From positions 310,001 to 374,000 of the IMG/VR virus record IMGVR_UViG_3300028840_001395: 64,000 nucleotides of DNA; one strand, given 5' to 3'. Of this stretch, positions 1,415-18,587 are shown one piece after another. A program made the position numbers and the translations under genes. Within the stretch, counting starts at the first letter, position 1; the number at the start of each line of letters is the position of its first letter. Below the pieces are notes generated by a model. The model worked only from the letters and a program-made list of their open reading frames with translations, was not told the DNA's origin and made no database searches.

Positions 1415-1448
1415 GTCGGCCTCCTCGACCATTCTACCCTATCGAGAG

Positions 1449-5866: not shown

Positions 5867-6101
5867 TATCTCCGAGCTGAAGAATCTTCCCCCGACGAAC
5901 AACGGCACCCCCATACATCACAGGCTTGACCTTGACGCGCTTGGCGAAGTTGCCGGTCACTTTCTCCACCTCGGTGGTGCGGAAACCGTTGTCGTAGTAG
6001 GTCACAGCATCCCCGGCCTTGACCTTCTTCACGTCCCCAACAGCAGGGCTCCGGCCACTCGCGGCACGGTAGATGACTTCGTATTTCTCATTAGTTTCCA
6101 T
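5820..6101 (-). CDS. Hypothetical protein (93 aa)
   Basis: ATG follows GGGAGAGG, with a TATAGT -10-like hexamer upstream at 6118-6123. It overlaps the previous gene tail-to-tail. Confidence 0.7.
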   Translation of the reverse strand: METNEKYEVIYRAASGRSPAVGDVKKVKAGDAVTYYDNGFRTTEVEKVTGNFAKRVKVKPVMYGGAVVRRGKILQLGDIKEVLRPRPDAPESD

Positions 6102-6156
6102 TGGATACCTCTCCCTTACTATACTCTATCCAATGGAAATTGAACCCCCTAGCGAG

Positions 6157-6885
6157 TCATCGGACGCAGCGGACGTGTCTCTCGTTGTTCTTGTGCGCCG
6201 TGAAGATCCACCCGTGAGAGAAAGACAGCCCCCACAGGGCCATCTCGTTATAGGAGGTCGAACTCCAGTGGATCTCACCGTCCAGGCAGTTTCCTCCGAG
6301 TCCCCCGGCCCAGTAGCAACCGCCCTCGGCACCACCCCCGAAGTTGCAGACCCCGTTGCATGTTGCATCCCAACAGTCTGTATCGTCCAATATGTCCCCG
6401 CTGTAGAACTTGCACTCGTGCGTGAGAGGGCACGACCCACCGGCCTCTACTGCGGGGCAGCCCCGCACCAACGACCGAAGCTCATCGATGGTGGGAAGCC
6501 TCATGCCCATGCCTTCGCAGTAGGTCTCGGCATCCGCGTAGGCGCGATCCTCGTCCGGGGTCTGCTCCCACTCCAGGCCCGTCGCGGGGTCGATGCAGGT
6601 CGAGCCATCGCACTCCAGGGACGTATCCGCGTCCGTGTCGGCGTCGGTGTCCGTGTCGGTGTCCGTATCGGTGTCCGTATCGGTGTCGGCGTCCGCGTCG
6701 CTATCGGCGTCTCCGGCCCCGCAGCTTCCTCCTTCGGGGATGCAGAAGCCCTCGCAGCACTCGAACCCACCCGGACAACCCTCGCTGGCATCACAGGCGA
6801 AGCGAGTCCCGGTCAAGTCCGTGTCCGTTCCACAGCCCGCGAGAGCGAAGCTGAACGCGATCAGGATGGTCAGCCAGGTCTTCAT
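6157..6885 (-). CDS. Lipoprotein with Cys-rich N-terminus, Asp-Thr linker and DUF1566 (Lcl C-terminal, CLec-like) domain
   Basis: Lipobox LAG-C18, a (D-A/T)n linker, and DPATGLEWEQ, AETYC, RLPTIDELRSL, WSST and terminal VRCVR motifs. Confidence 0.85.
   Translation of the reverse strand: MKTWLTILIAFSFALAGCGTDTDLTGTRFACDASEGCPGGFECCEGFCIPEGGSCGAGDADSDADADTDTDTDTDTDTDTDADTDADTSLECDGSTCIDPATGLEWEQTPDEDRAYADAETYCEGMGMRLPTIDELRSLVRGCPAVEAGGSCPLTHECKFYSGDILDDTDCWDATCNGVCNFGGGAEGGCYWAGGLGGNCLDGEIHWSSTSYNEMALWGLSFSHGWIFTAHKNNERHVRCVR
6622..6711 (-). repeat. Degenerate 6-bp coding repeat for the DADSDADADTDTDT... linker
   Basis: About 15 tandem gtgtcg/gtgtcc/gcgtcg-type hexamers. Confidence 0.85.
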
Positions 6886-7694
6886 CAGAACGTCCCTCCA
6901 ACAGCGAGACCCTTGAAGTCTCGATCCACTGCGGGAGCGACTGCGAATGCCGGTTCGTCCACCTCGAAGAAGTAGAGCAAGAGGGCCGTCACCGCCGCCA
7001 CCCCACCCACTCCAAGGATTACTCCACCAGCGATCTTTTCAGACCTACTTTTCTCTTCGATTTCCTGCACTTCGCTGTAGAACGTGCGGGTCGAGGTGCT
7101 CCGGTCAGCGAGACGCTGAGCTTCCGCGTCATCGGCATAACCCACACCTACCAGGACAGCCCCCGTAACCACGAGAGCGCCCGCCGTTCCTGTGGCCACC
7201 CACGTCCAGAGACGCTTCGGTTCCTGGGCCTCCAACTCAGCCTTGAACAGTCGGCGGAAGAGAACCGCCACCGCGTCAATAGCATCTTCCTCTGTGGCCC
7301 CCCGCAGTCGGCCTGCCTCGCGTCGCTCGACCTGGGCCGTCCGGATGTTGATGAGCTTGATGGAGATCAAGAGGGTCTCGCCCACCTTGTCCATCGAACC
7401 CGCCAGGAGCAAGTCCACTCCCAAGGCCCCGCCGATCTCCGCGAGGCAGGAGTCCTCGTCGCAGCCGACCATTTGCTTCTGTTGCTCGTGGTCGAACATC
7501 CTCTGGATGTCGTCGCGCCCGATGACCTGGTAGTCCCGCAGCCGGGCCGTCTCGTTGGCGAGGAACTCCTCGACCACGCGAGCGATCACCGGGTCAACGC
7601 CCCGGCGCACCTTGATCTCCGTCACGGCCAGCTTCGCTGCCCCCGCAGTCAGCGGGATGAGCAGTAGGACCAGGATGGTGAGGATCTTCTTCAT
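6885..7694 (-). CDS. Secreted/membrane protein with a CsgG/FlgO-like N-terminal domain, myxobacterial/deltaproteobacterial style
   Basis: True start is MKKILTILVLLLIPLTAGA (signal peptide). It contains GCDEDSCLAEIGGALGVDLLLAGSMDKVG, two Gly-rich hydrophobic helices and a C-terminal GLAVGGTF. The track's upstream extension overlaps the WGR gene and is spurious. Confidence 0.75.
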   Translation of the reverse strand: MKKILTILVLLLIPLTAGAAKLAVTEIKVRRGVDPVIARVVEEFLANETARLRDYQVIGRDDIQRMFDHEQQKQMVGCDEDSCLAEIGGALGVDLLLAGSMDKVGETLLISIKLINIRTAQVERREAGRLRGATEEDAIDAVAVLFRRLFKAELEAQEPKRLWTWVATGTAGALVVTGAVLVGVGYADDAEAQRLADRSTSTRTFYSEVQEIEEKSRSEKIAGGVILGVGGVAAVTALLLYFFEVDEPAFAVAPAVDRDFKGLAVGGTF

Positions 7695-7705
7695 GTCAGC
7701 CCCCG

Positions 7706-8347
7706 TCACGCGAACTCGATGTCCACGTCGTAGTCGCGGGCGAACTCGACTCCGCCCTTGGGGTCGAACTTGAGCAGTTCGTCGCCGTTCTCGTCCACCG
7801 CCGAGTAGCCCTTGACCGTGGTGCCGTCGCGGAGCACCTTGAGGCTCCGGATGAGGCTCCAGGGCTCCCCCAACGCGAGGAGGTCGCTCGACACCTGGGC
7901 CGGGGTGTTCGTCGCCTGTGCGGGCGCTGACGCCGCCTGGGCCGGGTTGCCGAGCGGGTGGTTGGACACCGGAGCGGGCTTCGGCTTCTTCGGGGCCTTC
8001 GCCTTCTTGCCGGGCTTCGAGGGCGTCGCGCCTCCGAGCTTGGCGATGGCCTTGGCGCTCATCCTGACGTACCCGTGGTCGGTGTAGTCGTAGCCCTTGG
8101 CGAGCTTCTCTTCGGTCTTGTCGCGGAGCTTGTCCCAGTCCGCGAGCATCGAGCCGTGCGGGGGTGCCCCGTTCTTGCCCCAGGCGATCTCGACCGGCTC
8201 GCCCAGGCCCCTGCCCGTGGCGTACCAGTACTTGGACGACCACCCCGACTTGTTGGCCGCGTTGCTCCCGACGTACTCCAGCCGGAACGACCAGGGGCGA
8301 CCCCGGCGGGCGATGTCCTCAGCGTCGTGAATCGTCATCCGTGCCAT
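7706..8347 (-). CDS. WGR-like domain protein
   Basis: SSKYWY...VEIAWGKNG...EEKLAKGY pattern, followed by a Lys/Pro/Ala linker and a small C-terminal domain. The start is coupled to the upstream stop (TGATG). Confidence 0.75.
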   Translation of the reverse strand: MARMTIHDAEDIARRGRPWSFRLEYVGSNAANKSGWSSKYWYATGRGLGEPVEIAWGKNGAPPHGSMLADWDKLRDKTEEKLAKGYDYTDHGYVRMSAKAIAKLGGATPSKPGKKAKAPKKPKPAPVSNHPLGNPAQAASAPAQATNTPAQVSSDLLALGEPWSLIRSLKVLRDGTTVKGYSAVDENGDELLKFDPKGGVEFARDYDVDIEFA

Positions 8348-8472
8348 CACTTGCCTCCCTTGCGCTTGCGCCGTCCAGAGAACGTGCGCTTCCGCTTCCC
8401 CGTCCAGCGCCGGACGATGGTGACCTTGCCGGGCACCTCGACCAGCACCTCGGTCTTGACGCACTGTGCCAT
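8347..8472 (-). CDS. Small basic protein (41 aa)
   Basis: MAQCVKTEVLVEVPGKVTIVRRWTGKRKRTFSGRRKRKGGK, with TGATG coupling on both sides and a GGAGG RBS. Confidence 0.65.
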   Translation of the reverse strand: MAQCVKTEVLVEVPGKVTIVRRWTGKRKRTFSGRRKRKGGK

Positions 8473-8654
8473 CACGCCTCCCCGGAGAAGCGGCCTCGGC
8501 ACGCCTTCTTGTTGGCCTGGTGCTTGCGGTCGCCCATCGTGACCGCCCGTCCGCGCCACTCGGCCAGGGTGCCCCCGGCGGCGAAGTGAGCGGCACGCGC
8601 CCCGCCCCGCTCGACGGAGGTGGCCTTGCTGTTGCCCTGATGCTGCCGTGCCAT
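8472..8654 (-). CDS. Small basic protein (60 aa), first gene of the leftward operon
   Basis: AAGGAG RBS directly downstream of the promoter motif, and TGATG coupling to the next gene. Confidence 0.7.
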   Translation of the reverse strand: MARQHQGNSKATSVERGGARAAHFAAGGTLAEWRGRAVTMGDRKHQANKKACRGRFSGEA

Positions 8655-8673
8655 CGCACTTCTCCTTTCCTCC

Positions 8674-8704
8674 CCTAGACTACTCTGGCCCAGCCCGAAA
8701 TAAG
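8674..8704 (-). promoter_or_regulatory. Leftward promoter-like motif CTTAT-N15-AGTAGTCTAGG
   Basis: One of three copies with identical boxes and spacing, each just upstream of an RBS and start codon. Confidence 0.75.
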
Positions 8705-8739
8705 ACCCTTTCTTTCAAAAAGAATTCGCGCGCGAGGGT

Positions 8740-8770
8740 CTTATCTTGCCCCCCGACAGAGTAGTCTAGG
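8740..8770 (+). promoter_or_regulatory. Rightward promoter-like motif CTTAT-N15-AGTAGTCTAGG
   Basis: Inverted partner of the 8674-8704 copy, 16 nt before ATG 8787. Confidence 0.75.
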
Positions 8771-8786
8771 GGAAGGGAGAGAGGCG

Positions 8787-9143
8787 ATGAACGGCATGGT
8801 CATTCACACCGCGAAAGTCGTCACCGAGCTGAAGGGGCTGACCTCCTGTGGCGAGGCCCGCAGGCTCATCGAGCGCGACCTGACCCCCGAGCAGCGGGAG
8901 CGGGTGCTGGCGCAGGAGGCCCGGTGGGAGGACTTCGAGCGCCGCGCCTGGGAGGGCGAGGACGAGGACGACGAGCCCGCCCCCGAGTGCGAGGGCTGCG
9001 ACTGCCCGGACGGGTGCGAGGGCTGCGTGGCGTGGGAGCTGGACGAGAGCATGGACGGCGACCACGAGAGCGGCCTGGCCAGCGCGGGCTTCGGGACGGA
9101 CGAGGACTACGGCTGCTTCGACGGCGGCTGCGACGAGTGGTAG
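8787..9143 (+). CDS. Small, highly acidic, Cys-containing protein
   Basis: 34 of 118 residues are D/E. It has a purine-rich RBS and is the first gene after the promoter motif. Confidence 0.75.
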   Translation: MNGMVIHTAKVVTELKGLTSCGEARRLIERDLTPEQRERVLAQEARWEDFERRAWEGEDEDDEPAPECEGCDCPDGCEGCVAWELDESMDGDHESGLASAGFGTDEDYGCFDGGCDEW

Positions 9144-9150
9144 GGAGGAC

Positions 9151-9753
9151 GTGATGGACCTGCAACTGATGAGAGCGGACATCGAGGCGGTTGCCGCCAA
9201 GGTGCTGCGTCGGCCCGTCAAGGTCAAGGTGGGCGAGATCACCGACATCGAGGGCGAGTCGGTCGAGGGCCTGACCGTGGACGGCGACATGTTCCTCTAC
9301 GCGGTCAAGCGGACGCGGAGCGGTCTGGGGGGCAAGCCCATCGAGTTCGAGATGGTCGCCATCGACATCCTGTTCGGCGGCGACGGGCAGTTCGTGGAGC
9401 CGGACGTGCGGCGTCACCCGAGCGACGGTGAGACGTTCCACGAAAGCGACGCCATCGCGGAGGTCATCGCGGTGCTGGCCCGTGCGGAAGCTCACGGGCA
9501 CCTGGAGGCCATCGGAGAGGCCCGGCACATCGCAGAGATGAACGAAGCCGCGAAGGGACTCGACGGCAAGACGGTGCCCCTGGTGCTGCCGCCGGGTTAC
9601 CCGGTCATGAAGATCGTCATCCAGCAGCGCACGGAGTGCAAGCACTGTGGCAAGGAGATGCCGAAGAACTCCGAGGGCTGGTGGGTGCGGACGACCGCCG
9701 AGCACAAGGGTGGGCTCTACCACACGGGCTGCATCAAGATCGAGGAGAAGTGA
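9151..9753 (+). CDS. Hypothetical protein with a C-terminal CxxC...HxxC zinc finger
   Basis: CKHCGKEM...LYHTGC motif and a GGAGG RBS. Confidence 0.8.
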   Translation: MMDLQLMRADIEAVAAKVLRRPVKVKVGEITDIEGESVEGLTVDGDMFLYAVKRTRSGLGGKPIEFEMVAIDILFGGDGQFVEPDVRRHPSDGETFHESDAIAEVIAVLARAEAHGHLEAIGEARHIAEMNEAAKGLDGKTVPLVLPPGYPVMKIVIQQRTECKHCGKEMPKNSEGWWVRTTAEHKGGLYHTGCIKIEEK

Positions 9754-9754
9754 C

Positions 9755-10198
9755 GTGAATCACGCTGCTATCCACACGGTCGTCCACACGAGCCATGAAC
9801 CCGACCGGCGACGCAGGCGTCGTCGGGCAGCCGATGGGATCACCCCCCGCGACAAGACCCGAGCGCCAGTCATCCCCGACCTGGACACGCTGCCTCCGTT
9901 CATGCTCGTGCCCGACACCGACGACCCCAAGGTCAGCCTCGTGTACGCCCTGGTGGACGGCATCGCCCGCTTCAAGGGTCGCATCTGGTTCACGGAGAAA
10001 TACCGCTACGGGGGCCGCGAGTATGGAGAGGGCTGGATGGCCGAAATCGCGGGCCGCGAGGATCCCGCTCAGCACGAGCACTTCTCCGACCGCACATGCA
10101 CCAAGAGCGGCAAGGCGACAGCCATCGGGAGGCTCGTGTCGCACCCCATCAGCCCGGAGATGTTGAAGAAAGGCTTATCTCGGGGTCGGGCAAAGTAG
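9755..10198 (+). CDS. Hypothetical protein (about 147 aa)
   Basis: GTG at 9755 follows GAGGAG. The stop codon lies inside the next promoter motif. Confidence 0.6.
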   Translation: MNHAAIHTVVHTSHEPDRRRRRRRAADGITPRDKTRAPVIPDLDTLPPFMLVPDTDDPKVSLVYALVDGIARFKGRIWFTEKYRYGGREYGEGWMAEIAGREDPAQHEHFSDRTCTKSGKATAIGRLVSHPISPEMLKKGLSRGRAK

Positions 10199-10204
10199 TC
10201 TAGG
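10174..10204 (+). promoter_or_regulatory. Third copy of CTTAT-N15-AGTAGTCTAGG
   Basis: cttatctcggggtcgggcaaagtagtctagg is followed by TGGAGGG and ATG 10212. Confidence 0.75.
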
Positions 10205-10211
10205 TGGAGGG

Positions 10212-11186
10212 ATGATGATGGATACCACAGCGACACCCAAGACCCCGGAGACCCACGCTGCCATCGCCCAGATCACCGCGAGCCACTGCTGCGTGTGCCG
10301 GGCGGAACTCACCGACGCCGAGAGCGTCGAGCACGGCATCGGGCCGGTCTGCTCCAAGCGTTACTACAACCCGCTGCACAAGCCCGACGCGAGCCAGATC
10401 AAGAACGCCCTCGGGCTGCTGGCCTGCTCCGACCTGCCCGAGCACATCCAGGACGGGTTCCTCAAGCTCGTCAACACCAAGGGCGGCGAGCCGCACGCCA
10501 ACGCCCGGCTCGCGTGCAACCTGCTGGTGTACTGGGCCTCGGCCCACTTCGACAACCGCGACGAGGTGTTCAAGTGCAGCGCCATCGTCCGCACGTTGGG
10601 CTACACCGAGCTGGCTGACAAGCTGGAAGCGGACCGCACGGTCGCCATCGTCCGCGAGCACTCCGACCACATCGAGGCCTTCATCCCCGACAAGTACCGC
10701 TTCCGGGGCGACATGCGGGACATCCCCGGCGCGGAGGCGCTCACGACCACCGAGTCCAGCCCCACGGGCGACACGGTGGAGAAGCCGCTCAAGGTCGGTC
10801 GCAAGGTCGGCTGGAAGGTGCCCATCGCGGAGAAGGACTACTTCCTGACCGTCCTGGGCTACCACTGCGGCGGCGACCTCGCCTGCGGTGACGGGCGCAT
10901 CTGGAAGATCCCGAACAAGCGGTGGGCAGACCTCCGACCCTTCAAGGCCCCCGCCCAGGCGACCACGGGGACGGCCCCGGCCAACGGGAGCATCCGGCTG
11001 GAGGACACCCCGAACGGTCACGTCCGCGTGTTCACCCCCTACAACACGGACTTCATCACCGACCTCAAGAAGATCCCCTGGAAGCAGCGCCGCTGGAACC
11101 CCAACGCCCGGTGTTGGGAGGTGGGCAAGAAGTACGAGGGTCGAGCCAAGGAGCTGATCAAGACCCACTACGGGGTGGCCCTGTGA
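10212..11186 (+). CDS. DUF6011-like zinc-finger protein with a C-terminal HARP-like domain
   Basis: CCVCRAELTDAESVEHGIGPVC at the N-terminus and FTPYNTDFITDLKKIP..RRWNPNARCWEV at the C-terminus. Confidence 0.7.
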   Translation: MMMDTTATPKTPETHAAIAQITASHCCVCRAELTDAESVEHGIGPVCSKRYYNPLHKPDASQIKNALGLLACSDLPEHIQDGFLKLVNTKGGEPHANARLACNLLVYWASAHFDNRDEVFKCSAIVRTLGYTELADKLEADRTVAIVREHSDHIEAFIPDKYRFRGDMRDIPGAEALTTTESSPTGDTVEKPLKVGRKVGWKVPIAEKDYFLTVLGYHCGGDLACGDGRIWKIPNKRWADLRPFKAPAQATTGTAPANGSIRLEDTPNGHVRVFTPYNTDFITDLKKIPWKQRRWNPNARCWEVGKKYEGRAKELIKTHYGVAL

Positions 11187-11449
11187 AGCACCTGCTCACT
11201 TTTGTCCAGCCCCGAGATGAGTGGCGCACCCAGGGCGATTACATGGTGCTGCCCCCGCGCCCTGTCCCAGGCCGACTTGTCAAGAGCCAAGACACCCGAC
11301 CCGGTGCTTGCCCGTGGTACTGGCAGGTAGGCGAGTTCGTGCGAGGGTTTCGCAGCATGGAGGAAGGAGTGGTCTTCCTCGGGCGTGTCTATGATCTACT
11401 GGTCAAGGGGGTCGAACCGGAGGAGATCGAAGACGACCGGAGGGACTAG
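11183..11449 (+). CDS. Hypothetical protein (88 aa)
   Basis: GTGA overlap with the upstream stop. It fills the gap up to the convergent late module. Confidence 0.55.
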   Translation: MKHLLTFVQPRDEWRTQGDYMVLPPRPVPGRLVKSQDTRPGACPWYWQVGEFVRGFRSMEEGVVFLGRVYDLLVKGVEPEEIEDDRRD

Positions 11450-12060
11450 CCCTCGGCCTTCTTGGGCTTGGGCAGCGTGTGCTTGCCGAGCATCTCCCAC
11501 AGGCCGACCGCCGCAGCGCCCGTCAGGAAGCCCTGGATGAGCGCCGTGGTCAGGTCGAGCCCCGACGCCAGAGCGACACCCATGTAGCCCACCATGCCGA
11601 TGGCCGCAGAAACCCAGGGCACGGCCTTGTCCGGCAGGAACGAGATGACGTTGAACTTGCGGAGAACCCAGACGATCAACGTCAGCAGCAGGCCCACGAA
11701 AAGCTGCCAGTTGCCGCCCTTGGCCGCATTGATGAGCTGCTCAACCAGCAAGATGACCTCCTCCGGATCCTCCGGAATCGGGGCGGTCTTGTCGGCCTCG
11801 GCCTCCTTGACGACCTTCAAGACCTTCTTGGCCTCGGCGGGAGCGGGAGCCGCGTCCTTGACCTCGGCAGGCTTGGCCTCGATCTTGGCCTCCTCCGCAG
11901 GAGCGGGAACCGCTTCGGCCTTGGCATCGGGGGCCGGAGCCGGGGCGGCTTCTGTGGCCTTGGCGTCAGGTGCCGGAGCCTCGGTGGGCTTGGCCCCCTC
12001 GTCGGCCATCGCTGCCAAGGGCAGGGCGAGCAGGGACAGAACCAGGATTGCGCGTCGCAT
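11446..12060 (-). CDS. Holin-like membrane protein with signal peptide and Ala/Pro/Glu/Lys-rich linker
   Basis: Three C-terminal hydrophobic segments end in GFLTGAAAVGLWE plus a basic tail. It has an AAGGAGG RBS and is the last gene of the late module. Confidence 0.6.
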   Translation of the reverse strand: MRRAILVLSLLALPLAAMADEGAKPTEAPAPDAKATEAAPAPAPDAKAEAVPAPAEEAKIEAKPAEVKDAAPAPAEAKKVLKVVKEAEADKTAPIPEDPEEVILLVEQLINAAKGGNWQLFVGLLLTLIVWVLRKFNVISFLPDKAVPWVSAAIGMVGYMGVALASGLDLTTALIQGFLTGAAAVGLWEMLGKHTLPKPKKAEG

Positions 12061-12072
12061 AGCGACCTCCTT

Positions 12073-12234
12073 CTAGTCGGACTTCTGAACGGCCCGAATC
12101 TTCTTCTGGATGGCTTCCTTCTGCTCCGGTGGCAGGCCCGGATTCCGCAGGGCTTCGCGGAGCCGGGCGATGTACTTGCGCTCGTAGGGAGCCCGGATCT
12201 TCTGGCTGATGTCACTGCGTCGGATGAAGGGCAT
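12073..12234 (-). CDS. Small basic protein (53 aa)
   Basis: Below the track cut-off. MPFIRRSDISQKIRAPYERKYIARLREALRNPGLPPEQKEAIQKKIRAVQKSD is TGATG-coupled to the upstream gene and fills the gap. Confidence 0.7.
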   Translation of the reverse strand: MPFIRRSDISQKIRAPYERKYIARLREALRNPGLPPEQKEAIQKKIRAVQKSD

Positions 12235-15200
12235 CAGCACGGCCCCCCGCCCGGATCATCCGGCCCCTCCTCGGGGTACGGAGCGAGCACCACATTCGCC
12301 GGGTTCGGGATCTCCCGGTTGAAGCCCCGGAACATCGGGCGAGCGCCCAGACGGTAACGGTCAGCCGCAGCGAAGCCTTCGCCGTAGCCCGCCGGGGAGA
12401 TGTCACCACCGAGGGTGACACCATCCTCCTGCGTCGTGTCCGTTCCCAGAACCCCGTAGGTCACGATGACCATCTGGATCTCATCACCATCGGTCAACGT
12501 GTAGGATCCACCGATCAGGTCGGCCTCCTCGTAAAAGTTCCGCACCAGGAGCGCCCGGCAGACCAGTGCCCCACCCTTCATCACGGGCTGGAGCGAGTCC
12601 GAGAAGGTCTCGGTCACCCAGTCCACCGGCCCGCCGGGGTGCTGGCCATCGAGCACGTACACGGAGCCACCGCCCCGGAAGAGACGGAAGATGCGGGAGC
12701 CGCCCGTATTCTGTTCCGTCCAGGCCGAGTAGTCCGTGACCGACACGGAGCCATCCGACTGAGCGAAGAGAGCGCCGGGCTCACCGAAGAAGCGGTCATA
12801 CTCATCCCGCTCGACCAAGGGCATGAGCGTCTGGATGGGACGCGGCCCGGTCGGGCTGGCCTTCATCGCAGAGGCGTCATCCCGCAGCGGGTTCTCGCAG
12901 AGGAAGTCCGAGTCCTGGAGCAGGGCACCCAGCGGCAGGCGTTCGGTCATGCCGGTGATGTTGACCTGGCTGGTGCCATCGCCCGCGTTCATCGGACGGT
13001 CAACACCTCCCGAAAGTGGGCTGCTGGAGCGCAGGCTGAAGGGGAACTCGTTGGTCGTATCCGCGAACGGGATGATAGTCTGGAATGGTGAGTTGACCGT
13101 CGGTGGGACGCTCTCAGTGTACCACTTGGTCTCGTAGGTGACCTCGTTGCCCTCGGCACCCGTGGGGACAGCGGCGATCCGAACCTTGTCCGGCTTCTCG
13201 GGGATCGCCAGGCAGTTCTGGCTCAGCGTCGAGTGCCTGTTGATGGCCGAGGCCAGATTGGTCACGGTCTCGTTGAGGTCACCCGTATCGTGAATGACCG
13301 TGATGTCCAAGTACTTCCCATCGAGATCAACGGTGTGTGCCGCCACATCCTGTGGTTGCAGGATCGCAGCCAGGAATGGCATGATCGGCCCAGGGCCAAC
13401 AGGAGCCGCACTGGCGTTGTAGATCCAGTAATCCACTGTATCAGGAGCGACCACTGCAGCCGTCACAATCAATGCCTCATACCCAGGAGGCGGAGGCACG
13501 GTATGATCCTGTGACAACACCACCACATCTCCTGGAAGGACACCGGACAAGGTCTGCGCTGGAAAGGGAACCCCTGTATTTGCTGGGATGGCAGCCACGG
13601 GGATAGATACGGGGACGATGGTGTAACCAGGCACTCCCTGTGGCCAGTCGTAGGCGGTCGGCGTCCAGGTGTTGAACACACCCACTCTGACGATTCCATC
13701 TGTCGGGACATGGCCCTCGAATACGATGTGTTCCAGATCTTCACGGGCGTTGATGATCACAGTGTCCCCGACCGTGACCCCAGAAATCGCCTTGTTAGTG
13801 AAGGTGTAGAATCCCGGTGCGTAGGTGCCCACCAGTTGGGTCGAATCCTTGATGAACGACTGAATCGAAGTGGTGTCGATGTCCCAGACATCCTCCTCGG
13901 GAATGCCCAGGCCAGCCGGAGGAGCGTCAGTGAGCTTGGACTTGTAGGCAGCCTGTGCCCCGTAGAGATCGACGTAGGTGCCATCCAGCAACCCGAAGCG
14001 ACAGAACACGTAGTTCTCATCGTCCGGATTCAAGGTGTCCACACCCCCCTGCACGAACAGAGTCAACTCGGCCCGTGAGTCGTTGGTCTTCTGCCCTTCG
14101 GTGAAGGCCCGTGTCTTGATGCGCCAGGCAGGCTGGTCATCCGAAGAGGGCTGCCGCAGCGCCGCCGGAGGCTTGTTGCAGGTGAAGCCCACATCGAGCG
14201 GAGTGCCAGGGAACAGCTCTCCGCCGATCTTGCCCGTCCCCAACGTCGTGTAGAAGTCCATGCTGGCCAGAACCTCGAAGCCACGGGCGTTCGGGGTCTG
14301 CGGGATGTACTCGCCATCGAAGTACTGCTGGATGGGCGTCTCCATCGCGTACTGGCCCGAGATCGGCACCTGACCATAGCGGTGCTCGTAGTCCGACGCC
14401 ACCGTGACTTCGCCACCCCGCGTCATGTAGGGGTCGCCCTGGTACACGGTACGGTTGAAGTCGTTGTAGAGCTGATCGTTGTACCCCGCCGGACACGGGA
14501 TGCAGAGATGGATACCTTCGAGTTCCTCTTCATCCGAGTCGTCGTGGGGATCTCCCGAACCGTCGTGCCAGCGCACGAGCACGTAGTTGTTCTGGTCGAT
14601 CCAGCCCTTGGCGAAACCGAAGATGCAGCACTCGACCACGTAGTCGAGATCCTCGAAGGTCTCACCATCCGTGTAGTGCGTCGAGCGCGTCAGGTCGAGG
14701 ATGTTGGACGGCACGATGTAGGTGTGGTCACCCTCACTCTCCGTCATGGAGTCACTGCACAGATCCTTGGCCCCGTCCTGCAAGATGAACAGCGTCTGCT
14801 GGTCGGCATCCTCACGGATGAGGTTCGGAGCCGAATCAGAGAGCATCTCCCAGCGATTCCCCTGGAAGGTACGCCCACCGAAGGTGTCCCAGTCCCGCTT
14901 GTCATAGACCCCGTAGAGCCGGGCGATGCCCAGGTACGGCGGAAGCTGAATGCCCTTGAGACCGCGCCCCAGGTCGGAGGAGTTGACCGCGTTGAGCGCC
15001 TCGATCACCTCGTCCGCGTAGAGCACGGTGTCATCGATGTCCGTGGTCTTGCGGGCCTTGTAGTAGGGCAGGTTGTTCCACGCGGCGACGAAGGTACCCG
15101 ACCCACCGTAGTTGGACGGGGTGTCAGTCGTGAAGTACATCGAGTAGACGCCCGGCGACGGGCTCCCGTTGTTGTCCGAGCCACCGATGATGTGGAAAAC

Positions 15201-18200
15201 GTGAGCGTCCGTATCCGTGGTGTCCACGAACAGGTGGTTGATGCCCGGAAGGAACGGCCCCTGACCGTTCGAGGTGTCCGTGTAGTAGGGGATGTCCTGC
15301 CGCCCGAAGCGAGGCATCCACTCACGCGGCATGGCATAGGCCGACTGCTTGCCATTGCCGCCGATGGAGCCACCCTGCGTGAAGAGATTCAGGGCATCCT
15401 TGTAGCAGCCGTTGGGATACTGGTATGACCCGAGCAAGCAGTCGGGAATCTCCGCGAAGTAGGCGTCCTCGAAGCTAAGCTGCTTGAGGGTCATCTCCCG
15501 GTCGCGGAAGGGGCGGAACATGATGGTCTTGCTGCCCCGGTCGATGAACAGCTCGTGCTCCCGATCCTGCTCCGTGAAGCCGACCACCTGGCCACCCGCA
15601 CTCGGCATGTTCGGGGCATACCAACCCAGCGCCGGGAGCTTGTTCCAGAGCTGGATGTGGGCCGGATCCCAGTAGGTCTCGTTGGTCGGCATGTTCGGGA
15701 AGGTCAAGTCCAGGGACGCCGGGCTCTGTCGGAGGTAGGCTCCCAGCGTCTCTCCGAGGCCACCGACCATAGCGAAGCGGACGATCTCATCCGGAACACG
15801 GGCGCTGCCGCCCCGTCCGGGGTGGTACATGAGGGTGAAGGAGATCTCCAGCTTGGACTGGAGTGGATAGGTGAATTCGACCCCTCCGCAGGGGAGCGAC
15901 AGGTCGTAGGACTCTCCGAAACCGAGCCGATACCGCTCCCACGGGTAGTTGTAGATCGGATTCCAGGCATTGATCCCGTAGAAGGTGCCCGAGCTGAGCA
16001 TCTTGCCGCAGATGTCCGTGAACACGATCACCAAGTCCGCCGTGTTCGAGTCGTAGTCCGAGGTGTCGTCCGAGTTGTGCTCCTGCGACCGGAACTCCAC
16101 CGTGATGTTGTTCCCGGTGGCGGTATCGAAGGTGGTGAAGTCCTGGCTCATCGGCTCAACCCGAATACGGGTTGCTGCCGAAGCCGGGCTCGAAGTCAGA
16201 CCCAACGAGGCCGTCCCCGCCCCGATGACTCGGAAGGCACCGTTGTTGTTGCGGGAATCCGTGTCTCCGTAGAGTACCACGTAGATCTCGGACTGGCTCC
16301 CGGTGGAGTTCTTCCCGTTGTTGGTCAGCATCCCATACAACGTCCGGGTGCCTCGCAAGAGGGGCTTCGAGATAGCCGTGGGGTCATTCTGGAAGTTGGG
16401 GATATCGACGGTTCCCGGCCCCGTGTGGTCATCCTGCGACCACCAGATGCCTTCTCCGTCATCGAAGTCGATGCCCACATCAATCTCGTAGATGTCTCCG
16501 GATAGCTCCTCCAGGTCAGAGGCGCTCCGATTCTTCGTCAACTCGTTGCGGAGCAGACCTCCGAGCGCGATGAAGGGATACTCGAAGTTCGTTGCCCGCC
16601 ACGGGTACATCGGCCCCGCGTGCCTGGCGGCTTCCTCGGGCAAGATGGCCTCGGGAGCAGGCTCGAAAGCCCGGAAGTCGATGAGTCGGAGAGAGATGGG
16701 ATACTGGTTCCCGTTCTCCGGATCCACATCCGGGTAGCCGGACTTCCAGTACTCTCGGGGCATCACGGCCCGAACAGCCCGTGTGCTTCCATCACGGAAG
16801 GTTCCTCGTGCCCCGTGCGTTCCGTCATCCCCACCAAGGAAGAAGAACAGCGACGTGCCGTTCACCCAGCCGTCAGTGTCAGCCAAATTGGCCACGTTCA
16901 TGAAACCAGAGGGCTTGAAGTCCGCACCCACGTCCCAGTTGGTGTTGGTGTCGAAGGTGTCCGTGACGTTGAACCCGACCTTGTTGTCGTCCTGGCTCGC
17001 CTCGTTGTCCAGCAGGAGAGTCACCTCGGGCTGGATGACCGCCCCGTCCGACCAGATGTAGCGGATACCGTCCGGCCCATCGAGAGCCTCGGTGTGGTTC
17101 GGCGGGTCGAGGGGGCCAGGCCGACCAGCCCAGAGGTAGTCCACCTCGTTGACCGTGACGCCCTGGGTGTCGCCCGCCGCCGCGTCCTTCCAGGCCGACC
17201 GCAGCTCGTTCTTCGCCAGAGCCGCGACGTTGTGCTCCAGGAGTCGCTTGAAGTCCCAGTCGTTCGCGTTGACACCGTGCCGCAGGTCGAGCACGTCCTG
17301 CTGAGCAATCTCATCCGAGTAGAGACCGTCCGGGCGCGTGTTGAAGAACTGGAGCGAAGCCCCGGCAGAATGGCCCACCGCTGCGGTGCCCCACCGTCCC
17401 CGGCCACCTGCCGGGATAGTGACGGTTCCTGCCACGTCATCCACGGCGGAGATACCCATGATCTCCCCGTCGATGAGGATGAAGATGTTGGACAACGTGT
17501 GCTGGGGGTCGTCCCAACCCGACCCCTCCAGGTTCGAGACGCTGATCGTGGCATCGCTGACCCCCGCTGCCGCCGTGGGGCTCAAGTCCTCTGCCAACGT
17601 GGCGACCGGCAAGGGCTGGGCTCCGTCGAGCGGGATGGGCAGATGCTTGGAGTTCGGGGTGCGCTCGAAACCACCGTTCTGCTCGGGGTCACCCGCATCC
17701 GTGACAGCCTGATACACCTTCGAGTTACGCCGGAAGATGGCCGCGATGGGGATGGCGTAGGTGTATCCGTCGATGGTTCCCAGAGCGTTGCCTGCGTCTC
17801 CGTCGCCAGCCCGCCAGAGGCCGGGATCACCCAGATCCTCGCGCATGTTGTCGAAGGAGAATCCAGGAATCGGGTCGTCCGCCGTTCCCTGACCGAGAAT
17901 GTTGGGATCACCCAGACCGTCCGGGTGGACTTCGAGAGCCACGCTGCCCCCGACTCCCGCAGCGGCCCCGCCGAACACGCGGAGGCGATACTGAACCTGG
18001 ATGCGACCCGTGGTCTCCATCCCGATGCTCGGGTCTTCGAGGTCATCCGTCAGGTTCGTCCCGCCATAGAGGACGTTCCCGTACTTCCAGAGGGTCGAGG
18101 CGTTGGGCTTGTTGACCTCCGAGGGATTCGGGTCAACCCGGCACTGCCAGGCTTCGAGGAACAGGAAGTCGATGCGCCGGTCAGTCTCGGGCGGCGGGTA

Positions 18201-18587
18201 GAGCTTGATCCAGTTGGAGAGGTCACCCTCCTCCGTGACCTGGGTTCCGACGACGGGCAGAATCCAGCCGTTGACGTTGGCCCAGATCACGGGATCTTCT
18301 TCCGGAGTCTCCAGCTCGCCCTGCGGCACTCGCGGGTTGCCGAACTTGAACAGGTTGGCCCACTGGGGGTCGAACTGGAAATCCTCCAAGGAGCGCGTCG
18401 GGTCGAGAATGAAGCCCGAAGGCATCATCGCCCGGACGAGTTGCCGGAGGTTCTCCCAGGCGATCTGGTTGCCCAGGTTGGCCTCGGAATCGAGAGGCGG
18501 CTTCCCGGCCTGCCAGACGACAGAGGAGAACTGCCGCTTGATGGCCGTCAGGGTGCGAGAAACGCCGTTACCAAAGTCCAAGCTCAT
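12234..18587 (-). CDS. Large virion tail/baseplate-associated protein with DUF6519-like N-terminus (2117 aa)
   Basis: N-terminal VSRTL...FSSVVWQAGKPPLDSE, paralogy with 22642-26241, and position in the tail module. Confidence 0.75.
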   Translation of the reverse strand: MSLDFGNGVSRTLTAIKRQFSSVVWQAGKPPLDSEANLGNQIAWENLRQLVRAMMPSGFILDPTRSLEDFQFDPQWANLFKFGNPRVPQGELETPEEDPVIWANVNGWILPVVGTQVTEEGDLSNWIKLYPPPETDRRIDFLFLEAWQCRVDPNPSEVNKPNASTLWKYGNVLYGGTNLTDDLEDPSIGMETTGRIQVQYRLRVFGGAAAGVGGSVALEVHPDGLGDPNILGQGTADDPIPGFSFDNMREDLGDPGLWRAGDGDAGNALGTIDGYTYAIPIAAIFRRNSKVYQAVTDAGDPEQNGGFERTPNSKHLPIPLDGAQPLPVATLAEDLSPTAAAGVSDATISVSNLEGSGWDDPQHTLSNIFILIDGEIMGISAVDDVAGTVTIPAGGRGRWGTAAVGHSAGASLQFFNTRPDGLYSDEIAQQDVLDLRHGVNANDWDFKRLLEHNVAALAKNELRSAWKDAAAGDTQGVTVNEVDYLWAGRPGPLDPPNHTEALDGPDGIRYIWSDGAVIQPEVTLLLDNEASQDDNKVGFNVTDTFDTNTNWDVGADFKPSGFMNVANLADTDGWVNGTSLFFFLGGDDGTHGARGTFRDGSTRAVRAVMPREYWKSGYPDVDPENGNQYPISLRLIDFRAFEPAPEAILPEEAARHAGPMYPWRATNFEYPFIALGGLLRNELTKNRSASDLEELSGDIYEIDVGIDFDDGEGIWWSQDDHTGPGTVDIPNFQNDPTAISKPLLRGTRTLYGMLTNNGKNSTGSQSEIYVVLYGDTDSRNNNGAFRVIGAGTASLGLTSSPASAATRIRVEPMSQDFTTFDTATGNNITVEFRSQEHNSDDTSDYDSNTADLVIVFTDICGKMLSSGTFYGINAWNPIYNYPWERYRLGFGESYDLSLPCGGVEFTYPLQSKLEISFTLMYHPGRGGSARVPDEIVRFAMVGGLGETLGAYLRQSPASLDLTFPNMPTNETYWDPAHIQLWNKLPALGWYAPNMPSAGGQVVGFTEQDREHELFIDRGSKTIMFRPFRDREMTLKQLSFEDAYFAEIPDCLLGSYQYPNGCYKDALNLFTQGGSIGGNGKQSAYAMPREWMPRFGRQDIPYYTDTSNGQGPFLPGINHLFVDTTDTDAHVFHIIGGSDNNGSPSPGVYSMYFTTDTPSNYGGSGTFVAAWNNLPYYKARKTTDIDDTVLYADEVIEALNAVNSSDLGRGLKGIQLPPYLGIARLYGVYDKRDWDTFGGRTFQGNRWEMLSDSAPNLIREDADQQTLFILQDGAKDLCSDSMTESEGDHTYIVPSNILDLTRSTHYTDGETFEDLDYVVECCIFGFAKGWIDQNNYVLVRWHDGSGDPHDDSDEEELEGIHLCIPCPAGYNDQLYNDFNRTVYQGDPYMTRGGEVTVASDYEHRYGQVPISGQYAMETPIQQYFDGEYIPQTPNARGFEVLASMDFYTTLGTGKIGGELFPGTPLDVGFTCNKPPAALRQPSSDDQPAWRIKTRAFTEGQKTNDSRAELTLFVQGGVDTLNPDDENYVFCRFGLLDGTYVDLYGAQAAYKSKLTDAPPAGLGIPEEDVWDIDTTSIQSFIKDSTQLVGTYAPGFYTFTNKAISGVTVGDTVIINAREDLEHIVFEGHVPTDGIVRVGVFNTWTPTAYDWPQGVPGYTIVPVSIPVAAIPANTGVPFPAQTLSGVLPGDVVVLSQDHTVPPPPGYEALIVTAAVVAPDTVDYWIYNASAAPVGPGPIMPFLAAILQPQDVAAHTVDLDGKYLDITVIHDTGDLNETVTNLASAINRHSTLSQNCLAIPEKPDKVRIAAVPTGAEGNEVTYETKWYTESVPPTVNSPFQTIIPFADTTNEFPFSLRSSSPLSGGVDRPMNAGDGTSQVNITGMTERLPLGALLQDSDFLCENPLRDDASAMKASPTGPRPIQTLMPLVERDEYDRFFGEPGALFAQSDGSVSVTDYSAWTEQNTGGSRIFRLFRGGGSVYVLDGQHPGGPVDWVTETFSDSLQPVMKGGALVCRALLVRNFYEEADLIGGSYTLTDGDEIQMVIVTYGVLGTDTTQEDGVTLGGDISPAGYGEGFAAADRYRLGARPMFRGFNREIPNPANVVLAPYPEEGPDDPGGGPC

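What the first reader, a model, noticed from the sequence alone, without database searches (positions are those of the whole stretch)
8671..10204. Three exact copies of CTTAT-N15-AGTAGTCTAGG ahead of divergent small-gene operons
Seen: copies at 8674-8704 (-), 8740-8770 (+) and 10174-10204 (+) have identical boxes and 15-nt spacers, and each lies just before an RBS and start. Read as (T/G)CTTAT-N17-TAGTCT, the geometry is sigma70-like, with a TAnnnT -10 but a non-canonical -35. Inference: this is a phage early-promoter class read by an unusual host sigma factor or a phage-supplied factor. It could be used to map the early/host-takeover genes genome-wide.
Basis: partly seen in the sequence, partly recalled or inferred. 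Interest (0 to 1): 0.65.

Follow-up and report, generated by a model that had tools for sequence, protein, structure and literature searches.

The report
Huge-phage promoter class with own sigma
The three repeats are copies of a roughly 64-member promoter family in a 436-kb phage, most likely read by the host RNA polymerase carrying a divergent phage-encoded sigma-like protein; this is a familiar strategy with a new consensus.

Summary
Three exact copies of CTTAT-N15-AGTAGTCTAGG lie at the stated places; 0.04 are expected by chance.

The window belongs to a 435,804-bp phage record with terminal repeats. A weight-matrix scan finds 64 copies genome-wide and none in a reversed control. The consensus is gGGkCTTAyyT-N11-rGAGTAGTCTrGG. 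The spacer is 15 nt in 59 of 64 copies. 53 of 64 copies are intergenic, and 54 of 59 regex-defined copies are co-oriented with the next gene. The usual gap to an SD plus start codon is 9-20 nt. Copies also precede tRNA arrays and a tmRNA, so this is a transcription signal.

Both boxes stay constant in relatives of 66-84% nucleotide identity while the spacers diverge. Two distant huge phages carry lineage-specific versions with the same geometry.

No phage RNA polymerase was detected. Each of the six records searched has one 382-aa-type protein that models as sigma domains 2-4. In this phage and three closer relatives that gene sits behind a conserved TTGACw-N16/17-TGnTAnnnT promoter.

The motif drives anti-defence, repair, ADP-ribosylation and tRNA genes. 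It was not found ahead of the replication or tail genes checked.

"Promoter class" and "phage-supplied factor" are supported. "Early" is unproven; delayed-early or middle is more likely. No transcription start sites could be obtained.

The parts
8672..8708 (-). Leftward promoter copy. -35-like box gggtCTTAT (8708-8700), 15-nt spacer, -10-like box AGTAGTCTAGG (8684-8674; TAGTCT = 8682-8677). Predicted start near 8670 (+/-3), inferred only.
   Evidence: Exact match. 44.8 bits in the weight-matrix scan. Sequence.
8736..8772 (+). Rightward promoter copy, divergent partner of the first. gggtCTTAT (8736-8744), spacer, AGTAGTCTAGG (8760-8770; TAGTCT = 8762-8767). Predicted start near 8774 (+/-3), inferred only.
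   Evidence: Exact match. 44.2 bits. Aligned with orthologous and paralogous divergent pairs in alignment A2.
10170..10206 (+). Internal promoter copy inside the rightward operon. It overlaps the end of ORF 9755-10198, whose stop TAG at 10196-10198 is part of the -10-like box. Predicted start near 10208 (+/-3), inferred only.
   Evidence: Exact match. 39.6 bits. Sequence.
8722..8735 (.). GC-rich palindrome (GAATTC followed by TCGCGCGCGA) after an A/T tract, between the two divergent promoters. It is a candidate regulator site and lies upstream of both promoters, so it is not transcribed from them.
   Evidence: Comparable ACGCGC-Nx-GCGCGT-type elements lie between 6 of the 8 divergent motif pairs in the genome. 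One is conserved in alignment A2. Function not tested.
6157..8654 (-). Leftward operon served by the first copy: ORFs 8472-8654 (60 aa), 8347-8472 (41 aa), 7706-8347 (213 aa), 6885-7709 (274 aa) and 6157-6885 (242 aa). No Pfam family above its cut-off and no PHROG match among the three scanned (8472-8654, 7706-8347, 6885-7709); 8347-8472 and 6157-6885 were not scanned.
   Evidence: My own rough gene calls. Pfam and PHROGs scans. The alternative 317-aa GTG ORF 7706-8659 has an N-terminus that looks out of frame.
8787..10198 (+). Rightward operon served by the second copy: ORFs 8787-9143 (118 aa), 9154-9753 (199 aa) and 9755-10198 (147 aa). All are ORFans.
10218..11449 (+). Genes served by the third copy: 10218-11186 (322 aa, DUF6011 zinc-ribbon-like N-terminus) and 11183-11449 (88 aa).
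   Evidence: Pfam PF19474, 33.5 bits.

Best explanation
The repeats are copies of a phage-specific promoter class with about 64 members in this 436-kb phage.

The two conserved blocks sit where a sigma70-family holoenzyme reads DNA. gGGkCTTAyyT covers about -37 to -28. rGAGTAGTCTrGG covers about -16 to -4, with TAGTCT as the -10 hexamer. The gap between hexamers is 17 bp.

The phage has no detectable RNA polymerase of its own. The most likely reader is therefore the host core polymerase carrying a phage-encoded specificity subunit. The best candidate is the single divergent sigma-like protein of 382 aa (genome 63762-64910, outside the window). It has an N-terminal winged-helix domain followed by sigma2-to-sigma4-like domains.

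That gene lies behind a conserved host-type promoter, TTGACw-N16/17-TGnTAnnnT. The proposed cascade is:
1. Host sigma transcribes the phage sigma-like gene.
2. The sigma-like factor turns on the motif promoters.
3. Those promoters switch on anti-defence, repair, ADP-ribosylation, NAD-salvage, tRNA and tmRNA genes and many small ORFan operons, including the three units in the window.

The replication and tail/baseplate genes checked show no copy of the motif.

Transcripts would start a few nucleotides after TAGTCT, giving very short leaders of about 5-16 nt that begin at or just before the SD.

Shown: the motif family, its geometry, its placement, its conservation and lineage-specific variation, and the sigma-like fold.
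Inferred: that it is a promoter, where transcription starts, that the sigma-like protein is its reader, and the timing.
For: Motif family:
- 3 exact copies in the window against 0.04 expected.
- 49 genome copies at up to 2 mismatches against 0 for the reversed pattern.
- 64 weight-matrix sites against 0 in the control. The spacer is 15 nt in 59 sites, 16 in 4 and 14 in 1.
- It is the dominant intergenic word set.

Placement:
- 53 of 64 sites are intergenic in a genome that is 92% coding.
- 54 of 59 are co-oriented with the next gene.
- 46 of 59 have an SD plus start within 75 nt, with a mode of 13-15 nt.
- There are eight divergent pairs.
- Copies precede a tRNA array, the tmRNA (21 nt away), tRNA-like genes and suppressor tRNAs.
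- No canonical sigma70-type promoter and no Rfam family lie in window 6000-12500.

Conservation:
- Contigs at 66-84% nucleotide identity keep both boxes in 28 copies while spacers and flanks diverge.
- G001 (536 kb, 52% GC) has rrRCTTACTTy-N-wGCGTAGAT. It has 120 hits to CTTAYTT-N14-GTAG against 0 in the control.
- G002 (381 kb, 51% GC) has ccGGCTTGGAA-N-yCGGTAGTy, in 29 of 31 copies.
- The geometry is the same in all three lineages.
- The exact motif is never multi-copy in IMG/VR or in 185,579 prokaryote genomes.

Reader:
- No Pfam beta or beta' family hit, no T7-type polymerase hit and no NADFDGD-type motif.
- The 382-aa protein gives a weak TIGR02937 span (28-163 of 165) and a weak r4_2 hit.
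- Its AF2 model has pLDDT 85.5.
- The 50 listed best of 386 Foldseek matches are all sigma factors, with probability up to 0.97.
- VIA gives Z 8.2-9.9 over residues 139-382 against sigma2..sigma4. Sigma4 alone fits at rmsd 2.0 A over 76 residues.
- Language-model neighbours are mainly sigma-factor clusters, alongside a few GerE/HTH-type clusters.
- There is one full-length copy in each of six related records and no other sigma above the Pfam cut-off.
- Its upstream TTGACw/TGnTAnnnT promoter is conserved in four relatives, with inner -10 positions varying as expected for a primary sigma.

Gene set.

Background: jumbo phages that lack a polymerase are reported to encode sigma factors for phage-specific promoters (PMC7824862, PMC13282480).
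Against: - There is no transcript evidence.
- The sigma-like assignment rests on fold and weak profile matches. Pfam r2 does not hit, r4_2 is below its cut-off (16.7 against 25.7 bits), and a profile search of PDB sequences found nothing.
- The VIA Z values lie in a range that helical proteins can reach by chance, as noted in the output.
- Nothing links this protein specifically to this motif rather than to the second promoter-like class GGGTAG(A/T)A.
- With a 7-nt distance from the -10 box, the predicted start falls inside the SD in several copies, including the third window copy. The true geometry may therefore differ.
- More distant holders of the sigma-like gene (G003-G010) have no CTTAYTT-N14-GTAG hits, and their own motifs were not derived.
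- The host is unknown.
Confidence: 0.6

Rival explanations
1. Host holoenzyme with its primary sigma reads the TAnnnT -10 box. The upstream CTTA box is bound by a phage-encoded activator that replaces -35 recognition, in the manner of sigma appropriation at T4 middle promoters or class II activation. The sigma-like protein would then serve another class, for example the late genes.
For: - TAGTCT fits TAnnnT, and the upstream block GCTTA superficially resembles the T4 MotA box TGCTTtA (from my own knowledge).
- The phage encodes several small HTH proteins with sigma region-4-like domains. One is a 177-aa protein with two such domains, at 47.8 bits.
- A second promoter-like class exists that the sigma-like protein could read instead.
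Against: - All positions from -16 to -4 are nearly invariant, including the inner -10 bases G, T and C. Those positions vary freely in the conserved host-type promoter ahead of the sigma-like gene. A primary sigma would not impose such invariance.
- The upstream box lies at -34..-30 with a 17-bp gap. The MotA box lies at -30 with an 11-13 bp gap.
- No AsiA or MotCF Pfam hits were found in six related records. There was no positive control, so this is weak.
Confidence: 0.15
2. A host alternative sigma factor (ECF-type or stress-type) reads the motif. The phage simply copies a host regulon's promoter.
For: - A strictly conserved bipartite consensus with a fixed spacer and a GTC-containing -10 box is reminiscent of ECF-type promoters (from my own knowledge).
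- The host is unknown, so its sigma repertoire cannot be checked.
Against: - No prokaryote genome among 185,579 species carries more than one exact copy.
- The motif varies by phage lineage (CTTAy/GAGTAGTCT, CTTACTT/GCGTAGAT, CTTGGAA/CGGTAGT) in phages of 62%, 52% and 51% GC. These phages share a sigma-like gene at 36-40% identity. This pattern fits co-evolution with a phage factor.
- A phage that depends on a stress sigma for about 64 promoters would be fragile.
Confidence: 0.12
3. An unrecognised phage-encoded RNA polymerase, single-subunit or highly divergent multisubunit, reads the motif.
For: - Many giant ORFs of 1,000-3,931 aa are unannotated.
- AGTAGTCTAGG followed by purines faintly recalls T7-class promoters, where the start lies inside the conserved block.
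- A start inside the block would solve the problem of the predicted start falling in the SD.
Against: - No hits to Pfam RNA_pol (T7-type), Rpb2_6 or Rpb1_2.
- No DFDGD-type catalytic motif in the called proteins.
- T7-type promoters are single contiguous blocks, not two boxes 15 nt apart.
- The giant ORFs in the window sit in a tail/baseplate block.
Confidence: 0.06
4. The motif is not a promoter. It is a repeated operator, an RNA-level element such as a leader or translation enhancer, or a mobile repeat.
For: - The -10-like block abuts the SD, so in principle it could act in the mRNA.
- No transcript data exist.
Against: - Copies precede tRNA, tmRNA and tRNA-like genes that have no SD or start codon.
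- The two blocks are conserved but the 11-nt core of the spacer is not, which rules out a mobile repeat or a structured RNA.
- The motif has no dyad symmetry.
- The strict orientation with genes and the back-to-back divergent pairs are what promoters show.
Confidence: 0.04

Closest known systems
Phage-encoded sigma factors with their own promoter classes in phages that lack a polymerase (SPO1 gp28 middle promoters; sigma factors of 'group 2' jumbo phages, PMC7824862; review PMC13282480)
   Same: - A bipartite promoter with about 17-bp hexamer spacing that differs from the host consensus.
- It is repeated many times ahead of a defined gene set.
- The phage has no polymerase but has a sigma-like gene.
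- That gene sits behind a host-type promoter, which implies a cascade.
   Different: - The sigma-like protein is below the Pfam and TIGRFAM cut-offs.
- It carries an extra N-terminal winged-helix domain. Some homologues hit Mrr_N.
- It belongs to an uncultivated huge-phage clade.
- The consensus (CTT...GTAG core) is unreported; a literature string search found nothing relevant.
- The sigma-promoter link is inferred, not shown.
T4 middle promoters (MotA box plus sigma70 -10 box, with AsiA)
   Same: - A TAnnnT -10 box.
- A non-canonical upstream box containing GCTTA.
- A non-late class of phage genes.
   Different: - The box position and spacing differ: -34..-30 with a 17-bp gap here, against -30 with an 11-13 bp gap in T4.
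- The whole -16..-4 stretch is invariant here.
- No MotA or AsiA homologues were detected.
ECF-type (group 4) sigma promoters
   Same: - Highly conserved two-block consensus.
- Rigid spacer.
- A -10 block containing GTC.
- The reader protein may be minimal, with sigma2 plus sigma4 domains.
   Different: - The -35 block lacks the AAC core.
- The candidate reader aligns structurally over a sigma2-to-sigma4 span and is larger at 382 aa.
- The promoters are phage-borne and specific to phage lineage.
Canonical sigma70/sigmaA promoters
   Same: The geometry is the same, and the -10 box fits TAnnnT.
   Different: - The -35 hexamer kCTTAy matches TTGACA at 0-1 of its six positions.
- The same phage also carries genuine TTGAC[AT]-N16-18-TAnnnT sites. 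Of 11, 10 are intergenic. The two classes are therefore distinct.

Membership tests
sigma70-family-dependent bipartite promoter | Two conserved blocks at -35 and -10 with a hexamer gap of 17 +/- 1 bp | tested here: met
   kCTTAy-N17-TAGTCT. The spacer between CTTAy and AGTAG is 15 nt in 59 sites, 16 in 4 and 14 in 1.
sigma70-family-dependent bipartite promoter | -10 hexamer of the form TAnnnT | tested here: met
   TAGTCT in 52 of 55 copies and TAGTAT in 3.
sigma70-family-dependent bipartite promoter | -35 hexamer resembling TTGACA (housekeeping class) | tested here: not met
   kCTTAy matches TTGACA at 0-1 of its six positions. Genuine TTGACw promoters exist elsewhere in the same genome. It is therefore not a housekeeping-class promoter.
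sigma70-family-dependent bipartite promoter | Located upstream of and co-oriented with transcription units, including non-coding RNA genes | tested here: met
   53 of 64 sites intergenic, 54 of 59 co-oriented, and copies ahead of tRNA arrays and the tmRNA.
sigma70-family-dependent bipartite promoter | Transcription start 5-9 nt downstream of the -10 hexamer | not testable with these tools
sigma70 protein family (for the 382-aa candidate reader, genome 63762-64910) | Region 2 and region 4 recognised by curated profiles above their cut-offs | tested here: not met
   PF04542 gives no hit. PF08281 scores 16.7 bits against a 25.7 cut-off. TIGR02937 scores 17.7 bits against a 42.9 cut-off, although the match spans positions 28-163. 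Two homologues carry precomputed PF04545.
sigma70 protein family (for the 382-aa candidate reader, genome 63762-64910) | Sigma2-(sigma3)-sigma4 fold in colinear order | tested here: met
   The 50 listed best of 386 Foldseek matches are all sigma factors, probability up to 0.97, best E 7e-3. VIA gives Z 8.2-9.9 over residues 139-382 against sigma2..sigma4 of sigmaA, sigmaB and ECF sigmas. Sigma4 alone fits at rmsd 2.0 A over 76 residues. Caveat: these Z values are within reach of helical proteins by chance.
sigma70 protein family (for the 382-aa candidate reader, genome 63762-64910) | Binds core RNA polymerase and confers promoter specificity | not testable with these tools
The host is unknown.
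T4-type middle promoter (sigma appropriation) | MotA box centred at -30, 11-13 bp from the -10 box, with MotA and AsiA encoded | tested here: not met
   The box lies at -34..-30 with a 17-bp gap. No AsiA or MotCF Pfam hits in six related records, without a positive control.
T7-type single-subunit polymerase promoter | One contiguous block of about 20 bp, and a T7-like polymerase gene | tested here: not met
   There are two blocks separated by a variable 11-nt core. PF00940 gives no hit, but the control was silent.

The most novel reading that the evidence does not exclude
A clade of uncultivated huge phages (about 140-540 kb records) carries a private transcription system. A winged-helix-fused, highly divergent sigma co-evolves with a CTT-N~19-GTAG promoter family. 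Each lineage has its own version:
- CTTAy / GAGTAGTCT
- CTTACTT / GCGTAGAT
- CTTGGAA / CGGTAGT

These would form naturally orthogonal sigma-promoter pairs that partition host-takeover genes from replication and virion genes.
Probability: 0.45. Interest if true: 0.6.

Novelty: new member of a known kind. Interest (0 to 1): 0.5.

Why it matters
The motif provides a sequence-only handle on the transcription programme of an uncultivated 436-kb phage and its relatives.

- It marks about 64 transcription units, and 120 in a 536-kb relative.
- It separates an anti-defence, repair and tRNA gene set from the replication and virion modules.
- It flags many ORFan operons, including those in the window, as likely host-takeover genes.

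That would show how polymerase-less huge phages redirect host RNA polymerase. For a specialist the principle is expected; the consensus, the protein architecture and the co-variation across the clade are new.

Tried and rejected
Searches that found nothing useful:
- A megablast of window 8000-11000 against GenBank phages gave no match.
- A scan of IMG/VR for the exact motif gave only 30 single chance hits. The phage's own record is masked there.
- A scan of 185,579 prokaryote species genomes gave 112 single hits and nothing multi-copy.

Tools that did not run:
I did not attempt it by any other route.
There is therefore no verdict on core binding.

Sigma candidates considered:
- The Pfam r2 hit in a DUF2325 protein (274511-275986) was rejected as spurious.
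- The 171-aa and 177-aa proteins have region-4-like HTH domains only and lack a sigma2 domain. I kept them as possible activators.
- A profile search of PDB sequences with the sigma-like family found no sigma. Only fold comparison did.

Other ideas rejected:
- The leftward window gene is not a frameshifted paralogue of the ArdC gene at 145350-146294. There is no similarity, and the shared 'MAR' start is coincidental.
- A simple extension of the exact motif to distant relatives failed. Their versions had to be found de novo.
- Stop-codon recoding, suggested by the suppressor tRNAs, is not supported. TAG ends 177 of 499 called genes.
Full report
**1. Observation**

The pattern CTTAT-N15-AGTAGTCTAGG occurs exactly three times in the window, at 8674-8704 (-), 8740-8770 (+) and 10174-10204 (+). 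All three have zero mismatches, and allowing three mismatches adds no further copies. Shuffles give 0.04 expected, and none of 100 shuffles reaches three. The 11-mer alone gives the same three places.

Each copy is followed by a purine-rich SD and a start codon: ATG 8654 (-), ATG 8787 (+) and ATG 10218 (+). The first two copies are back to back, with 35 bp between the CTTAT boxes. The third lies inside the rightward operon and overlaps the stop codon of ORF 9755-10198. The simple sigma70 scan finds no canonical promoter anywhere in 6000-12300, and Rfam finds nothing in 6000-12500.

**2. Context**

The window is bases 310001-374000 of a 435,804-bp virus record with direct terminal repeats. GC content is about 62% across the window.

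My own rough gene calls give 499 genes and 92% coding. Aragorn finds 70 tRNA calls and a tmRNA.

The motif is a genome-wide family:
- 21 exact copies, and 49 copies at up to 2 mismatches, against 0 for the reversed control pattern.
- After building a weight matrix, 64 sites at 14 bits or more against 0 in the reversed genome.
- The three window copies are among the best, at 44.8, 44.2 and 39.6 bits.
- Word counting shows that this is by far the most enriched word set in intergenic DNA. The only other strongly enriched words come from tRNA arms.

**3. Anatomy**

The consensus is gGGkCTTAyyT - 11 variable nt - rGAGTAGTCTrGG, followed by tGaGGAGG. C-T-T-A is nearly invariant.

The spacer is rigid: 15 nt in 59 sites, 16 in 4 and 14 in 1. 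There is no dyad symmetry.

If TAGTCT is taken as -12..-7, then kCTTAy falls exactly on -35..-30 with a 17-bp gap. A start 7 nt after the hexamer would give leaders of about 5-16 nt that begin at or next to the SD. In some copies, including the third window copy, that start would fall inside the SD. The predicted starts (about 8670, 8774 and 10208) therefore carry an uncertainty of at least +/-3 nt.

**4. Placement**

- 53 of 64 sites are intergenic.
- 54 of 59 regex-defined copies point the same way as the next gene.
- 46 of 59 have an SD and start codon within 75 nt, most often 13-15 nt after the motif.
- Eight pairs are divergent.

Copies also stand ahead of genes that are not translated:
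- the first tRNA array, with the motif at 84898;
- the tmRNA, with the motif ending 21 nt before it (this copy has a spacer of 16 and TAGTAT);
- tRNA-like genes at 412787;
- a suppressor-tRNA pair at 242 kb.

This argues that the signal acts on transcription, not translation. That criterion is not met.

**5. Genes served**

Pfam scans of 19 downstream proteins gave the following:
- a polynucleotide kinase/phosphatase;
- an ABC/AbiEii-like ATPase;
- a NAPRTase-like protein;
- ArdC;
- an NAD-dependent DNA ligase split into two genes, each with its own motif copy;
- a PARP-like ADP-ribosyltransferase;
- an ADP-ribosylglycohydrolase;
- many proteins with no family.

The genes in the window units are ORFans, apart from a DUF6011 domain.

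The motif was not found ahead of the replication genes checked in the 30-78 kb minus-strand block. That block includes class II ribonucleotide reductase, a clamp loader, a PD-(D/E)XK nuclease and an SNF2 helicase. The motif is also absent from the whole 321-391 kb block. In the window that block holds giant ORFs with tail and baseplate-wedge matches.

The class therefore marks a host-takeover, anti-defence, repair and tRNA gene set.

**6. Conservation**

A metagenome scan recovered the source contig and 13 contigs from another set of samples. Twelve of the 13 align to this phage at 66-84% nucleotide identity. Together the 13 carry 28 copies of the motif, with the consensus gGGCTTACTTg-N-rGAGTAGTCTAGG. 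In aligned orthologous divergent regions both boxes are invariant while the spacers and flanks have diverged (alignment A2).

Two distant relatives were found through the sigma-like protein described below. Each has its own version with identical geometry:
- G001 (536 kb, 52% GC) has rrRCTTACTTy-N-wGCGTAGAT. It gives 120 hits to CTTAYTT-N14-GTAG against 0 in the control.
- G002 (381 kb, 51% GC) has ccGGCTTGGAA-N-yCGGTAGTy. 29 of 31 GGCTTGGAA copies carry the second box.

The shared core is CTT at -34..-32 and GTAG at -13..-10.

Eight more distant records have no hit to that generic pattern. Their motifs were not derived. The exact motif is never multi-copy in IMG/VR or in one genome each of 185,579 prokaryote species.

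**7. Who reads the motif**

Six-frame Pfam searches find no beta or beta' family, and no T7-type polymerase. The control for the T7-type search was silent. The called proteins contain no DFDGD-type catalytic motif. Host core polymerase is therefore the likely enzyme.

The phage also has genuine housekeeping-type sites, TTGAC[AT]-N16-18-TAnnnT. Of 11 such sites, 10 are intergenic. The host's primary sigma therefore probably reads the usual consensus. The motif's -35 block matches that consensus at no more than one of six positions.

The near-invariance of every base from -16 to -4 is also unlike a primary-sigma promoter. In the conserved housekeeping-type promoter described below, the inner -10 bases vary freely between relatives.

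The candidate reader is one gene, genome 63762-64910 (+), 382 aa, outside the window. The evidence that it is sigma-like is as follows:
- It gives a weak but full-span match to the sigma70/ECF model TIGR02937, positions 28-163 of 165.
- It gives a sub-threshold region-4 hit.
- It has 45 homologues, several on contigs of 165-536 kb. Two of them carry PF04545.
- An AlphaFold model built on 28 of them has pLDDT 85.5.
- The 50 listed best of 386 Foldseek matches are all sigma factors in initiation complexes, with probability up to 0.97 and best E-value 7e-3.
- VIA-align places residues 139-382 on sigma2..sigma4 of sigmaA, sigmaB and ECF sigmas at Z 8.2-9.9. The sigma4 part fits at rmsd 2.0 A over 76 residues.
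- Language-model neighbours of residues 135-382 are mainly sigma-factor clusters, many of them viral, alongside a few GerE/HTH-type clusters.

The stretch DDHIQNC..LI.RD followed by LATYAVRSGFTDIR resembles sigma regions 2.2-2.4. That comparison is from memory, not a test. The sigma2-like domain is the best conserved part of the family.

The N-terminal 130 residues form a winged-helix domain. Some homologues hit Mrr_N.

Each of six related records has exactly one full-length copy and no other sigma above the Pfam cut-off.

The gene sits alone on its strand behind TTGACT-N16-TGgTATTGT. That promoter is conserved in three relatives as TTGACw-N16/17-TGnTAnnnT, with varying inner -10 bases and a strongly conserved leader (alignment A3).

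This suggests a cascade in which host sigma makes the phage sigma-like factor, which then activates the motif promoters. Some tRNA arrays carry a motif copy and a TTGACA promoter in tandem, which would give expression in both phases.

**8. Limits**

- Nothing here shows transcription.
- The sigma assignment is fold-based. The Z values are within the range that helical proteins can reach by chance, as the tool's own note warns.
- The link between this protein and this motif is inferred from co-occurrence and lineage-specific co-variation. A second promoter-like class, GGGTAG(A/T)A, exists and cannot be excluded as the protein's target.
- The host is unknown.
- Gene calls are my own heuristic.

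**9. Comparison and novelty**

The behaviour is that of the known strategy in which a phage without a polymerase encodes a sigma factor for phage-specific promoters. Examples are SPO1 gp28 (from my own knowledge) and the group 2 jumbo phages (PMC7824862; review PMC13282480). Huge phages are reported to encode sigma70 genes (PMC7162821).

Three things are new here:
- the consensus, since the motif string does not occur in the searchable literature in any relevant context;
- the divergent, winged-helix-fused sigma-like family;
- the demonstration that three lineages carry matched variants of one promoter architecture.

It is not a T4-type middle promoter. The spacing differs, and no MotA or AsiA homologue was found. 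It is also not a T7-type promoter.

I rate it a new member of a known kind, with moderate interest.

**10.

'Promoter class with sigma70-like geometry and a non-canonical -35' is supported. 'Phage-supplied factor' is favoured over 'unusual host sigma'. 'Early' is unproven, and the class is more likely delayed-early or middle. The suggestion that the motif can map host-takeover genes genome-wide is borne out.

Noticed in passing
window 1432-1438 (-), and genome-wide (e.g. G000 34048, 40005, 183245, 246705, 293807): A second promoter-like class, GGGTAG(A/T)A(t/g). 22 of 39 copies are intergenic. They often lie only 5-25 nt before start codons, and some would give leaderless mRNAs. They sit ahead of replication genes such as the clamp loader and the PD-(D/E)XK nuclease. 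In the window one sits ahead of the phosphoesterase gene 686-1414. The same words appear in G001. They may be extended -10-type sites for the host sigma.
   Followed up: partly
G000 63540-63762 (locus L056:735-975), outside the window: Upstream of the sigma-like gene there is a conserved TTGACw-N16/17-TGnTAnnnT promoter. It is followed by a leader of about 100 nt that is almost invariant near the SD (GTGGCTCAGGC...GCCC.AGCCCAGGAGG) in four relatives. This may be a regulatory 5' UTR. A second conserved block (CCTGTCTTTACAGG..TATAG) faces the divergent gene.
   Followed up: partly
window 8722-8735; G000 between the divergent motif pairs at 98, 146, 197, 230 and 251 kb: GC-rich inverted repeats of the type ACGCGC-Nx-GCGCGT, flanked by A/T tracts, lie between 6 of the 8 divergent promoter pairs. 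They are candidate binding sites for a dimeric regulator.
   Followed up: partly
G000 85246-122868, 90688-91048, 241943-242296, 409728, 412787-412950: The phage carries 70 tRNA calls and a tmRNA (tag ANDEAVLQAA). These include a tRNA with anticodon CUA. Upstream of it lies an uncalled tRNA-like sequence whose anticodon loop reads UUA and which has an insertion of about 190 nt. There are also aragorn calls with 4-base anticodons. TAG still ends 177 of 499 called genes, so genome-wide recoding is not evident.
   Followed up: partly
G000 31416-31949 (-) and 241411-241926 (-): Two small proteins with sigma region-4-type HTH domains but no sigma2 domain. One is 177 aa with two such domains (47.8 bits to Sigma70_r4_2). 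The other is 171 aa. They are possible activators or minimal sigma-like factors.
   Followed up: partly
window 12234-64000 (-): A long minus-strand block of giant ORFs of 984-3,931 aa. One has a tail-protein match (12234-18587) and one a baseplate-wedge match (38689-42210). This is the virion module, and it has no copy of the motif.
   Followed up: partly
G001 (IMG/VR record of 536,053 bp), e.g. 131560, 243986, 275504, 389493: Downstream of many G001 promoter copies lies a conserved leader hairpin (GGGCACGnACGATGCCC) followed by AAGGAAC and a start codon. It looks like a promoter-plus-leader cassette. This phage has no such cassette.
   Followed up: no
G000 98200-99756 (+): A motif-driven AAA_5 ATPase gene is followed by a gene that shares only the N-terminal winged-helix domain of the sigma-like protein (profile positions 7-126, E 8.5e-11). 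G001, G002 and G005 also have such a second gene.
   Followed up: no
G000 198163-200946 (+): The NAD-dependent DNA ligase appears split into two genes. One holds the adenylation and OB domains, and the other holds the HhH and BRCT domains. Each has its own motif copy.
   Followed up: no
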